A stretch of DNA of 63,402 nt, counting the filler, from Calcarisporiella thermophila CBS 279.70 (Eukaryota > Fungi > Calcarisporiellomycota): NCBI RefSeq assembly GCF_041956535.1. It is 12 parts of 11 records of this genome, joined end to end, with 100 filler letters (N's around TTAATTAATTAA, not from the genome) between each part and the next. Parts side by side here need not be neighbours in the genome. Positions count along the whole stretch, not along the records: positions 56,523 to 58,336 come from NW_027192231.1; 11 more parts are not named here. One strand, 5' to 3'. Position 1 is the first letter of the stretch, and each line of letters begins with the position of its first letter. The notes under the pieces are model-generated. The model had not been told where the DNA came from. It did not search any database and was given only the letters and a program-made list of their open reading frames with translations. Shown here piece by piece: positions 6,396-58,436 of this stretch. The translations under genes were made by a program, and so were the position numbers.

Positions 6396-6735
6396 TGTTA
6401 CGAGATAATTGGTTTTTGTACGGGGGAGTCACAGAGGCAGTCACATAGGCATTCAGGAAGCGCGATATCTTTAAAGTGGAGCAGCCAATAGAATTGTTTA
6501 CCGCTACGTTGCCGACCCCTCGTGGTTACTCGCCGTCCTCGTGGTTACTCTTATGCTCCCTCATGGTTACTTTGTTGAGGTTGATTGCTATTTTGTTGGT
6601 TTAGCTTTATTTATCCTTGAACACCAGTTGAGCTATTTCCTTTATCTCTTAATTCTATTTAAACCCCTCTATTTTGTTTTACTGTTCCTCACCAATCTCT
6701 TATTTTTATTATTAAGGTGAGGATAAGCTATTATT
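6396..6735 (+). mobile_element. LTR (family LTR1), starting TGTTA 15 bp upstream of tRNA-Trp and truncated by the contig end
   Basis: Starts TGTTACGAG and is homologous to 62250-62527 and 23273-23342 (reverse strand). Contains repeated CCTCGTGGTTACTC. Confidence 0.75.
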
Positions 6736-56422: not shown

Positions 56423-56607
56423 NNNNNNNNNNNNNNNNNNNNNNNNNNNNNNNNNNNNNNNNNNNNTTAATTAATTAANNNNNNNNNNNNNNNNNNNNNN
56501 NNNNNNNNNNNNNNNNNNNNNNAGGGACCTAAGTCCAAGTCTCTGATACGCTGCGCCATCGATCCAAATTGTATTAATTTTCTCTAGGCAAACCTAACCT
56601 AGCAGAA

Positions 56608-56689
56608 GACAGCTTGTCCGAGTGGTTAAGGAGTGTGACTAGAAATCACATGGGCTCTGCCCGCGCAGGTTCGAGTCCTGCAGCTGTCG
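56608..56689 (+). tRNA. trnS-AGA: tRNA-Ser(AGA)
   Basis: GACAGCT/AGCTGTC acceptor, TGTGA-CTAGAAA-TCACA anticodon arm, long variable arm. Confidence 0.95.
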
Positions 56690-57439
56690 AAAATGAAATA
56701 TTTTATTAGTCGTGAAATAATTTTTTGAAATCAATTTAGCATATCCTCCTTTTGAGATTTGGATTCGTTCAGGCATCGTGCAATTCAGCACCACATAATC
56801 CACCAGCGTGGGTGACTCTCGAACAATATTCATCTTTTCTCACAAATCACCCTAACTCGTTATCTTAGCGAATCTGCTCCTCAGACGACTCTTTAGTTTA
56901 ATCCATAAATATTCTAAGGGGTTGAGATCTGGTGATTGTGCAGGCCAATCGAGAACTTGAATTTTGTAGTTTTCGAATCACCGATCAATGAGTTTGGCTT
57001 TGTGCTTAGGTATAAATGTTCTATGATATGACATGCTCTTCCAATTCTATATGAAATTATGCAACCTCATATCATTATACCTCCACCACCGTTGATCGTT
57101 GGCTGTAAATGACGCTCTTGCAGTGGTTCATTACGCCTCTTCCAGAACCACCTTCGCCTTTTAGTATCAAAAATATATATACCTGACATTCATCGAAAAA
57201 ATTACGCGGTTCCAATCTTCAATGGCCCAATTACTGTATTTGCAAATGTCGGTCTGCTTAGGCGATATCTTTTCAACAGAAAAGGTTTTTGCTCTTGGCT
57301 CTGTCTACAACCATTACAATGGAGAGCTTTACAAACAGTGTTCACGGAAATAACCTCTTTAGTCGTCTCATTCCAAAGTTCTTGCCCTATGACTGCATTC
57401 TAACACCCTCCCGTCGTCACGCTATTCATAGTAGATCAG

Positions 57440-57660
57440 GATGGATGTTGAACTTTGGCCATTCTACATGTATGTGGTCCAGGTATCTTACAGTAATTGT
57501 GCAATAAGGTAGATCCTCTCTCCAGGATAGTATCACTTTATTTCCACTTTTGTCTATCTGGCGGGAGTAAAATATTTTCTAAGGGCTCCGGAGTGTCATG
57601 ACTCGGTTCGAGTTTGGCGTAGCAATGATCTTGCAACCACCCCACGTTGCCAAAATAATT
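57440..57660 (-). mobile_element. Degenerate LINE ORF1 fragment (zinc knuckle region)
   Basis: Homologous to 11310-11500. Confidence 0.7.
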
Positions 57661-57797
57661 CCAATAAATATTGAACTTCAATGAATATATTATTATATAT
57701 TCAATTTATACTTGTTTTTTTTTTTTACTATCTGCTTAGGAAAAAATTGTTATGTAATATATCAATCAAAAGAATTAAAAATGTTACAAGATTATAT

Positions 57798-57879
57798 CGA
57801 CAGCTGCAGGACTCGAACCTGCGCGGGCAGAGCCCATGTGATTTCTAGTCACACTCCTTAACCACTCGGACAAGCTGTC
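57798..57879 (-). tRNA. trnS-AGA: tRNA-Ser(AGA), identical inverted copy
   Basis: Exact reverse complement of 56608-56689. Confidence 0.95.
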
Positions 57880-57963
57880 TTCTGCTAGGTTAGGTTTGCC
57901 TAGAGAAAATTAATACAATTTGGATCGATGGCGCAGCGTATCAGAGACTTGGACTTAGGTCCC

Positions 57964-58301
57964 GGGGGAGGGTTAGTGTAGTGGACTATCCCTGGGATGC
58001 CGATGAGAACGGCGTGGGTTCGAATCCCACTTCCCCCACCAGCACTTACCCTTAGTTTGTGACTGCTATCCACTTGATCAGAAGCTGAGTCTTGATTATT
58101 GAAAAGATCGCCCTTACGATAAGTACAAAAGATTACATCAGTTTCACGTACAGGCTATTCACGACAACTACGATACACGCATATCGATTGAAAGTCTATC
58201 GATCCAGGACCTATATCTCGTTATGTTAAGTCCATTGACATTAACTTCAGTAATATATGGAAATTAAATAAAAGTTTCCATTGATTGATCAAAAAAAAAA
58301 A
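57964..58301 (+). mobile_element. tRNA-derived SINE family A, full length, 13-bp TSD
   Basis: GGACTTAGGTCCC at 57951-57963 and 58302-58314; A box TAGTGTAGTGG, B box GGTTCGAATCC, A11 tail. Confidence 0.93.
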
Positions 58302-58436
58302 GGACTTAGGTCCCTCCCTCTCACATTTATTCCTGTNNNNNNNNNNNNNNNNNNNNNNNNNNNNNNNNNNNNNNNNNNNNTTAATTAATTAANNNNNNNN
58401 NNNNNNNNNNNNNNNNNNNNNNNNNNNNNNNNNNNN

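What the first reader, a model, noticed from the sequence alone, without database searches (positions are those of the whole stretch)
57798..58314. LINEs and SINEs integrate at a fixed distance and orientation about 70-87 bp upstream of tRNA genes (a TRE5-like system in a fungus)
Seen: SINE-A has its TSD 72-84 bp upstream of tRNA-Ser, 5' end facing the tRNA. The LINE-C tip joins 87 bp upstream of tRNA-Asp in the same polarity. The LTR1 sequence used as target at other loci (ATCGCGCTTCCTGAATG) lies empty 70-86 bp upstream of tRNA-Trp (6450-6466). The targets (GGACTTAGGTCCC, ATCGCGCTTTCTGAATG, CCCTCTACGTGTAGCAG) are unrelated to each other, so specificity is positional rather than sequence-based. 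Known: Dictyostelium TRE5-A (L1 clade) inserts about 50 bp upstream of tRNA genes with the same polarity via ORF1p-TFIIIB contact. Inference: an independent fungal L1/Tx1 lineage, plus its SINEs, is tethered by the Pol III machinery. I know of no fungal description, but I cannot search the literature here.
Basis: partly seen in the sequence, partly recalled or inferred. Interest (0 to 1): 0.92.

Follow-up and report, generated by a model that had tools for sequence, protein, structure and literature searches.

The report
SINE inserted upstream of tRNA-Ser gene
A young tRNA-derived SINE really does sit 72-84 bp upstream of a tRNA-Ser gene, head-to-head, but one insertion cannot show that the Pol III machinery guides it, and the site also lies inside what looks like the inverted repeat of a dead Tc1-like transposon.

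Summary
The part of the observation that lies in this piece is correct to the base. A 338-nt SINE on the + strand (57964-58301) has a tRNA-like head with A and B boxes and an A11 tail. It is flanked by a perfect 13-bp target-site duplication, GGACTTAGGTCCC. That duplication lies 72-84 bp upstream of tRNA-Ser(AGA) (57798-57879, - strand), and the two are transcribed in opposite directions.

The general claim, a fixed-distance, Pol III-tethered, TRE5-like LINE/SINE system in a fungus, cannot be tested here. The piece holds one insertion and no LINE. No other copy of the SINE or of this genome could be retrieved from any collection.

The tRNA-Ser gene and its 84-bp upstream flank form a perfect 167-nt inverted repeat with a second copy (56524-56690). 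That second copy looks empty at the same site. The two arms bracket a decayed Tc1/mariner transposase in the layout of long terminal inverted repeats.

A known alternative therefore fits equally well: Tx1-type LINEs and their SINEs that aim at sequences inside mariner or LTR elements. Chance nesting also remains open.

Rough odds for why the SINE landed here: positional Pol III targeting about 0.3, TE-sequence targeting about 0.2, chance about 0.4, assembly artefact about 0.05. Interest is moderate.

The parts
56524..56690 (.). Left arm of a perfect 167-nt inverted repeat: the 84-bp upstream flank, tRNA-Ser and 1 nt beyond. It runs to the edge of the piece.
   Evidence: I1, 100% complementary; the two flanks are identical
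56524..56536 (-). Unoccupied copy of the SINE target (reverse complement of GGACTTAGGTCCC), 72-84 bp upstream of the left tRNA-Ser. The next base, 56523, pairs with the post-SINE flank base 58315, so this arm looks empty. That rests on one base only.
   Evidence: I3, 14 nt
56608..56689 (+). tRNA-Ser(AGA) gene, copy 1. T-runs follow at 56700-56703 and 56722-56727.
   Evidence: 56.7 bits
56723..57634 (-). Decayed Tc1/mariner-type transposase. The DDE_3 motif reads ...[18 protein letters not shown]..., and there is a weak HTH_Tnp_Tc3_2 match. Many stops and frameshifts are present, and the longest stop-free stretch is 65 codons. The ends are approximate.
   Evidence: DDE_3 E=3.8e-7, 30.5 bits against a cutoff of 28.6
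57797..57963 (.). Right arm of the inverted repeat. Its outer end is the SINE junction.
   Evidence: I1
57798..57879 (-). tRNA-Ser(AGA) gene, copy 2. A T5 terminator follows on the - strand at about 57776-57780.
57951..57963 (+). 5' copy of the target-site duplication GGACTTAGGTCCC (-72 to -84 from the tRNA 5' end)
   Evidence: D2
57964..58301 (+). Full-length tRNA-derived SINE, 338 nt. The head is 57964-58041 (box A 57974-57984, box B 58017-58027, encoded CCA). The body is 58042-58290 and the A11 tail 58291-58301. There is no internal T4 terminator.
   Evidence: clan CL00001 match 57964-58041; cloverleaf-like fold, -34 kcal/mol, z -2.0
58302..58314 (+). 3' copy of the target-site duplication
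   Evidence: D2
58315..58336 (.). Flank distal to the SINE, possibly the outermost 21-22 nt of the Tc1-like inverted repeat. The piece ends ...TTCCTGT, whose reverse complement ACAGGAA... resembles the terminus of L009.
   Evidence: comparison with L009; inference

Best explanation
Shown: a recent, full-length retrotransposition of a Pol III-type, tRNA-derived SINE by LINE-mediated target-primed reverse transcription. From the geometry of the duplication, the first nick was on the - strand, which is the tRNA-sense strand. It fell between -71 and -72 (5'-GTCC^AAGT-3'), and its 3' end primed on the A-tail. The second nick on the + strand fell between -84 and -85, giving the 13-bp duplication. 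The result is a head-to-head pair of Pol III units 84 bp apart.

Inferred, about 55% likely: the landing site lies inside one arm of a Tc1/mariner-like transposon whose long inverted repeats (about 190 nt) each carry a tRNA-Ser(AGA) gene. The other arm is still empty.

Why the SINE landed there is not decided by this piece. My ranking is as follows:
- Untargeted nesting in TE-rich DNA that happens to hold a tRNA gene: about 0.4.
- Positional guidance by the Pol III complex (TRE5-like): about 0.3.
- Sequence-specific targeting of a site in the transposon repeat (Tx1-like): about 0.2.
- Assembly artefact: about 0.05.
For: The perfect 167-nt inverted repeat, whose left arm matches the post-SINE flank for one more base, comes. 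The Tc1-type transposase remnant lies between the arms on the - strand. Mapping against the intact relative P0090 puts the transposase stop about 33 nt from the left arm and its start about 163 nt from the right arm. P0090's own element, L008, has inverted repeats of about 200 nt lying 12 nt after its stop and 177 nt before its ATG. The piece ends in ...CCTGT, which as a reverse complement reads ACAGG.... The Logan contig L009, which is a whole Tc1-like element, starts in a similar way with ACAAGT.... Without the SINE, the inferred element would be about 1.48 kb, against 1.24 kb for L009 and 1.6 kb for L008.
Against: The arms are 100% identical while the transposase is badly decayed. That is not expected for old inverted repeats, and in L008 the arms are only 75-80% alike. 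It needs gene conversion, a recent inverted duplication, or collapse by the assembler. A complete, functional-looking tRNA gene inside a Tc1 inverted repeat is unusual, and I found no precedent. The TA duplication and the left terminus lie outside the piece. Emptiness of the left arm rests on a single base. The ranking of site-choice mechanisms is prior-driven, because there is only one insertion.
Confidence: 0.6

Rival explanations
1. TRE5-like positional targeting. The partner LINE's integration complex is tethered by the Pol III machinery (TFIIIB/TFIIIC) on the tRNA gene. It nicks at a set distance upstream in a set orientation whatever the sequence, and the SINE borrows that machinery.
For: The insertion is upstream of a functional-looking tRNA gene in the opposite transcriptional orientation, as stated for TRE5 in PMC5911963. 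The first-strand nick site GTCC^AAGT lies in a 50% GC patch and is not T-rich, although AT-rich sequence is close by. That argues against a simple L1-type AT preference. A TATA-like TATTAAT at about -37 to -31 would place TFIIIB between the tRNA gene and the nick (sequence reading).
Against: Only one insertion is visible. The distance, -72/-84, is not the -44 to -54 of TRE5. The identical second tRNA-Ser target appears unoccupied. The finding was selected because of the coincidence. As an illustration with assumed numbers, about 10,000 SINE copies and about 300 tRNA genes in about 50 Mb would give a handful of such neighbours by chance. No LINE or ORF1 is available. The target lies inside a repeated unit, which also suits other models.
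Confidence: 0.3
2. Tx1-type sequence-specific targeting of another transposon. The partner LINE's endonuclease recognises a sequence in the Tc1-like inverted repeat, around the near-palindrome GGAC-TTAG-GTCC. The closeness to a tRNA gene then follows only because that repeat carries the gene.
For: Documented precedent: SINEU and Tx1-Mar insert at set positions and orientation into Mariner-N4_AMi, other Tx1 families insert into LTR elements and Harbinger transposons, and Xenopus Tx1 inserts into Tx1D (PMC4494074). Here the target sits in an inverted-repeat arm flanking a Tc1-like transposase. The nick site is GC-rich and non-canonical.
Against: The second copy of the same 13-mer, in the left arm, seems unoccupied. 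The clade of the partner LINE cannot be checked. According to that paper the Tx1 clade is described from animals. Again there is only one insertion.
Confidence: 0.2
3. Assembly artefact. The inverted repeat, or the placing of the SINE next to this tRNA copy, was produced by collapse or mis-joining of repeats in a fragmented assembly.
For: The arms are exactly identical and the piece stops one base past the branch point between SINE and empty site. That is where a graph assembler would break.
Against: The 1106-nt spacer is not palindromic, so this is not a simple fold-back. The SINE has both junctions with a perfect duplication in one contig. At least one tRNA-Ser copy with this flank must therefore carry the SINE.
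Confidence: 0.05

Closest known systems
Dictyostelium discoideum TRE5-A (non-LTR retrotransposon aimed at tRNA genes)
   Same: Insertion is upstream of a tRNA gene in the opposite transcriptional orientation. The mechanism is target-primed reverse transcription with an oligo(A) end. The nick site shows no obvious sequence motif (PMC5911963; PMC5006619).
   Different: TRE5 inserts about 44-54 bp upstream, whereas this insertion is at 72-84 bp. TRE5 is an autonomous LINE in an amoeba and its behaviour is proven over many copies and by assays. Here there is one SINE copy, no LINE in view, and an unidentified host.
SINEU / Tx1-Mar insertion into Mariner-N4_AMi (crocodilians) and other target-specific Tx1-clade LINEs
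   Same: A SINE, with its LINE, lands at a defined place and orientation inside a Tc1/mariner-type DNA transposon. Related families use LTR elements as targets (PMC4494074).
   Different: Those SINEs have snRNA-derived heads and the hosts are animals. Specificity there is shown over dozens of copies. Here the head is tRNA-like, there is one copy, and the target transposon carries a tRNA gene.
Yeast Ty3 / Ty1 and dictyostelid DGLT-A (LTR elements aimed at Pol III genes)
   Same: The tRNA-upstream region serves as the landing zone. These are the known tRNA-gene-targeting elements in fungi.
   Different: They integrate through an integrase, carry LTRs, and sit at other distances (Ty3 at 0-20 bp). 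They do not use target-primed reverse transcription and are not SINEs.
AfuSINE2 tRNA-related SINEs of Aspergillus fumigatus
   Same: Fungal SINEs of 140-493 bp with a tRNA-related head, A and B boxes, an encoded CCA at the end of the head, and 4-14 bp target-site duplications (PMC5063351).
   Different: The text searches of that paper found no mention of tRNA genes as neighbours. No sequence relationship was tested.
Tc1-like transposons with long inverted repeats, such as the element in Logan contig L008
   Same: A DDE_3 transposase of about 340 aa is flanked by inverted repeats of about 200 nt, placed just after the stop and about 170 nt before the start.
   Different: The arms of L008 carry no tRNA gene and are only 75-80% alike. 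The transposases are at most about 41-47% identical over the matched part.

Membership tests
tRNA-derived SINE (non-autonomous non-LTR retrotransposon) | 5' head related to tRNA with internal Pol III A and B boxes | tested here: met
   Box A is TAGTGTAGTGG (57974-57984) and box B is GGTTCGAATCC (58017-58027). The fold is cloverleaf-like. Rfam gives a tRNA-clan match at 57964-58041, below the tRNA gathering score. ARAGORN does not call it a tRNA.
tRNA-derived SINE (non-autonomous non-LTR retrotransposon) | 3' A-rich tail and flanking target-site duplication | tested here: met
   A11 at 58291-58301 and a perfect 13-bp duplication
tRNA-derived SINE (non-autonomous non-LTR retrotransposon) | Many dispersed copies, and a 3' end shared with a partner LINE | not testable with these tools
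   There is one copy in the piece. Two SINE-head patterns found nothing: the 24-mer in metagenome contigs and the 27-mer in GTDB genomes and IMG/VR. No sequencing run was listed. No LINE is in the piece.
TRE5-like Pol III-directed non-LTR integration | Narrow distance distribution upstream of many different tRNA genes | tested here: inconclusive
   One insertion at -72/-84. The identical second tRNA-Ser site appears empty.
TRE5-like Pol III-directed non-LTR integration | Constant orientation opposite to the tRNA gene | tested here: inconclusive
   The one insertion is in the opposite orientation (the TRE5 rule is given in PMC5911963). A single case has a 50% chance of that.
TRE5-like Pol III-directed non-LTR integration | Independence from target sequence | not testable with these tools
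Only one target sequence is available.
TRE5-like Pol III-directed non-LTR integration | Element protein contacts TFIIIB, and targeting depends on the B box | not testable with these tools
   This needs the LINE's ORF1 and experiments.
Tx1-type target-specific LINE/SINE | Recurrent insertion at the same sequence inside a repeated element | tested here: inconclusive
   The target lies in a repeated arm. Of the two copies of the 13-mer, one is filled and one appears empty.
Tc1/mariner DNA transposon | DDE_3-type transposase with an N-terminal helix-turn-helix domain | tested here: met
   DDE_3 E=3.8e-7, 30.5 bits against a cutoff of 28.6. HTH_Tnp_Tc3_2 is weak (E=0.0066, below its cutoff). 1583 library proteins match the 41-aa motif piece. 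The gene is dead, with many stops.
Tc1/mariner DNA transposon | Terminal inverted repeats flanked by a TA duplication | tested here: inconclusive
   A perfect inverted repeat of at least 167 nt sits in the expected layout. The termini and the TA lie at or beyond the edges of the piece. The right end reads ACAGG... as a reverse complement.
Eukaryotic tRNA-Ser gene | Cloverleaf with a long variable arm, anticodon AGA, and a downstream T-run | tested here: met
   Rfam 56.7 bits with all pairs standard; ARAGORN; T-runs read; 94% identical to tRNA-Ser genes in metagenome loci L001 and L004.

The most novel reading that the evidence does not exclude
A non-dictyostelid, probably fungal, LINE/SINE system reads the Pol III transcription complex. 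It integrates about 70-90 bp upstream of tRNA genes in divergent orientation. Some of its landing pads are themselves mobile, being tRNA-Ser genes carried in the long inverted repeats of a Tc1-like transposon.
Probability: 0.25. Interest if true: 0.75.

Novelty: new member of a known kind. Interest (0 to 1): 0.4.

Why it matters
If positional targeting were confirmed, it would be a further independent origin of tRNA-gene targeting by a non-LTR element, and the first outside social amoebae. It would also be the first to involve a SINE. That would give a second system in which to ask how a target-primed reverse transcription complex reads TFIIIB/TFIIIC. If the inverted-repeat reading is right, a DNA transposon that carries tRNA genes would be a route for spreading tRNA genes, and Pol III landing pads, around a genome. 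As it stands, the piece documents only an ordinary young SINE insertion in an unusual neighbourhood.

Tried and rejected
- **Other copies of the SINE or genome.** The look-up of sequencing runs on the whole piece listed no run, so read laying could not be used. A SINE-head 24-mer found nothing in metagenome contigs. A 27-mer spanning head and body found nothing in GTDB genomes or IMG/VR.
- **Protein look-ups.** Ten ORFs of the piece, including one inside the SINE body, are not in the 15-billion-protein collection. The 65-aa helix-turn-helix piece had no homologue. The 41-aa DDE piece had only two distant short hits. Its hits in the representative library are at most 75% identical over about 30 residues, so the genome seems absent from these collections.
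- **tRNA-Ser relatives.** A tRNA-Ser 33-mer fetched seven short metagenome loci. They share only the tRNA with the piece. None has the SINE or the upstream flank.
- **RIP as the cause of transposase decay.** Rejected. TpA/ApT is 0.74 and (CpA+TpG)/(ApC+GpT) is 1.34.
- **Simple fold-back chimera.** Rejected, because the 1106-nt spacer is not palindromic.
- **A second retroelement ending in the A13 tract at 57714-57726 (- strand).** No target-site duplication was found, so this was left open.
- **Literature.** Searches found no fungal non-LTR element or SINE aimed at tRNA genes. They also found no Tc1 element with tRNA genes in its inverted repeats. The library is incomplete, so this does not prove absence.
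- **L010.** This locus is a 100-Mb chromosome-scale record of a large eukaryote. It was not used.

Full report
**What is in the piece.** The piece spans 56523-58336 (1814 bp, 40% G+C).

It holds two identical tRNA-Ser(AGA) genes. One is at 56608-56689 on the + strand and the other at 57798-57879 on the - strand. ARAGORN calls both, and Rfam scores each at 56.7 bits against a gathering score of 29, with every pair standard. Both are followed by T-runs.

The genes are part of a perfect 167-nt inverted repeat, 56524-56690 against 57797-57963. Each arm holds the tRNA gene, one base past its 3' end, and the 84 bp upstream of it.

**The SINE.** Directly outside the right arm lies a 338-nt element, 57964-58301 on the + strand.
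- Its first 78 nt fold into a cloverleaf-like structure.
- They match the tRNA/tmRNA clan in Rfam but fall below the tRNA threshold. ARAGORN does not call this stretch a tRNA.
- The head carries box A (TAGTGTAGTGG, 57974-57984) and a perfect box B (GGTTCGAATCC, 58017-58027), and it ends in an encoded CCA.
- A 249-nt body without a T4 run follows, then A11 (58291-58301).
- The element is flanked by the exact 13-nt direct repeat GGACTTAGGTCCC at 57951-57963 and 58302-58314.

About 0.03 such repeats are expected by chance in 1.8 kb, and this one abuts both element ends. This is a textbook full-length tRNA-derived SINE with a target-site duplication, and the perfect duplication and intact tail point to a young insertion.

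The duplication lies 72-84 bp from the tRNA 5' end at 57879, and the SINE's 5' end faces the tRNA gene.

**How it got there.** This is inferred from the standard geometry of target-primed reverse transcription. The first nick was on the - strand at the tRNA-proximal edge of the duplication, 5'-GTCC^AAGT-3', between -71 and -72. The second was on the + strand between -84 and -85. The primer end (...AAGTCC-3') cannot pair with poly(A), and the site lies in a 50% G+C patch although very AT-rich DNA is nearby. The endonuclease therefore does not behave like a simple TT|AAAA-preferring L1 enzyme. A TATA-like TATTAAT sits at about -37 to -31, so a TFIIIB footprint would lie between the tRNA gene and the nick.

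Between the two tRNA genes, on the - strand, lies a dead Tc1/mariner transposase.
- A 41-aa stretch (...[18 protein letters not shown]...) passes the Pfam DDE_3 cutoff (E=3.8e-7, 30.5 bits against 28.6).
- A 65-aa stretch matches HTH_Tnp_Tc3_2 weakly.
- 1583 library proteins match the motif piece.
- No stop-free stretch exceeds 65 codons.
- Dinucleotide indices give no sign of RIP.

Mapping onto the intact 339-aa relative P0090 places the transposase stop near 56723 and its start near 57634. That is about 33 nt from the left arm and about 163 nt from the right arm.

P0090's own element, Logan contig L008, has inverted repeats of about 200 nt. They lie 12 nt after its stop and 177 nt before its ATG. 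The layouts match.

The piece ends ...TTCCTGT, which as a reverse complement reads ACAGGAA.... L009, a Logan contig that is exactly one Tc1-like element, begins in a similar way with ACAAGT.... That is what is expected when an assembler stops at the terminus of a repeated element.

Without the SINE, a symmetric element would be about 1.48 kb. I therefore think it more likely than not (about 55%) that the arms are the long inverted repeats of a Tc1-like transposon, and that each carries a tRNA-Ser gene.

Three points argue against this reading:
- The arms are 100% identical although the transposase is badly decayed, whereas the arms of L008 are only 75-80% alike.
- A whole tRNA gene in such a repeat has no precedent that I could find.
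- The TA duplication is out of view.

A recent inverted duplication, gene conversion between the arms, or collapse by the assembler could account for the identity.

The left arm's copy of the target is followed, in the outward direction, by the base that follows the SINE on the right (56523 pairs with 58315). That arm therefore looks unoccupied, but on the strength of one base.

**Can the general claim be tested?** No. The LINE-C/tRNA-Asp junction, the LTR1/tRNA-Trp site and the other target sequences lie outside the piece. No LINE is present. Every route to more copies failed:
- no sequencing run was listed;
- two SINE patterns found nothing, the 24-mer in metagenome contigs and the 27-mer in GTDB genomes and IMG/VR;
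- none of ten ORFs is in the protein collection;
- the transposase pieces have only distant relatives;

A tRNA-Ser pattern did retrieve seven metagenome loci. They share only the tRNA with the piece (89-97% identity over the aligned parts) and carry no SINE.

The host could not be identified.

**Comparison with what is known.** According to the review read (PMC5911963), TRE5 elements insert about 44-54 bp upstream of tRNA genes in the opposite transcriptional orientation. TRE5-A ORF1 protein contacts TBP, Brf1 and Bdp1, and targeting needs an intact B box. [quoted passage not shown] The insertion here shares upstream position and orientation, but not the distance.

My searches of the open literature found no fungal non-LTR element or SINE aimed at tRNA genes. 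If the claim were true it would be a new variant.

A documented alternative fits the local context at least as well. In crocodilians, SINEU families and the Tx1-Mar LINEs insert at set positions and orientation into a mariner family. Other Tx1 families aim at LTR elements or Harbinger transposons, and Xenopus Tx1 aims at Tx1D (PMC4494074). A LINE of that kind aimed at a sequence in the Tc1-like repeat would place its SINE at a fixed distance from the tRNA gene without any role for Pol III.

Chance also remains open. The finding was picked out because of the coincidence. With thousands of SINE copies and hundreds of tRNA genes, a few such neighbours are expected in any genome. Short contigs of a fragmented assembly are also enriched in nested repeats.

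**Verdict.** The anatomy is solid. It consists of a young tRNA-derived SINE inserted by target-primed reverse transcription, 84 bp upstream of and divergent from one of two identical, inverted tRNA-Ser genes that bracket a dead Tc1-like transposase.

The cause of the site choice is open. My rough odds are chance nesting about 0.4, Pol III-guided positional targeting about 0.3, sequence-specific targeting of the transposon repeat about 0.2, and assembly artefact about 0.05.

A genome-wide histogram of distance and orientation, together with inspection of all copies of the tRNA-bearing repeat unit, would settle it.

Noticed in passing
window 56524-56690 and 57797-57963: A perfect 167-nt inverted repeat. 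Each arm is a tRNA-Ser(AGA) gene plus its 84-bp upstream flank, and the repeat ends exactly 1 nt past the tRNA 3' end. The arms bracket a dead Tc1-like transposase in the layout of long terminal inverted repeats. This may be a DNA transposon that carries tRNA genes. A recent inverted duplication with a breakpoint at the tRNA gene is the alternative.
   Followed up: partly
window 56691-57796: The decayed transposase shows no RIP signature (TpA/ApT 0.74, (CpA+TpG)/(ApC+GpT) 1.34). Decay is by scattered stops and frameshifts. If the host is a fungus, it does not seem to apply RIP to this repeat.
   Followed up: partly
window 57714-57726: A T13 run on the + strand, which is A13 on the - strand, lies 71 nt downstream of the 3' end of the right tRNA-Ser. 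No flanking duplication was found. It may be an old retroelement tail or just AT-rich spacer.
   Followed up: partly
window 58036-58041: The SINE head ends in an encoded CCA after the acceptor stem. This suggests the head derives from a processed, mature tRNA-like RNA rather than from a tRNA gene. The same feature is annotated in the AfuSINE2 elements of Aspergillus fumigatus (PMC5063351).
   Followed up: no
L001 442-605 and L004 1039-1122: The closest metagenomic tRNA-Ser(AGA) genes (94% identical) lie in contigs of 21% G+C. There a tRNA-Val gene ends 4 nt before tRNA-Ser, and a tRNA-Lys gene is nearby. This is a tightly packed tRNA cluster in an unidentified AT-rich eukaryote.
   Followed up: no
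L008 1-204 and 1413-1615: An intact Tc1-like element in a Logan contig has inverted repeats of about 200 nt. The terminal motif AATTGTCCACAT recurs at the inner end of each repeat (inner and outer binding-site layout).
   Followed up: partly
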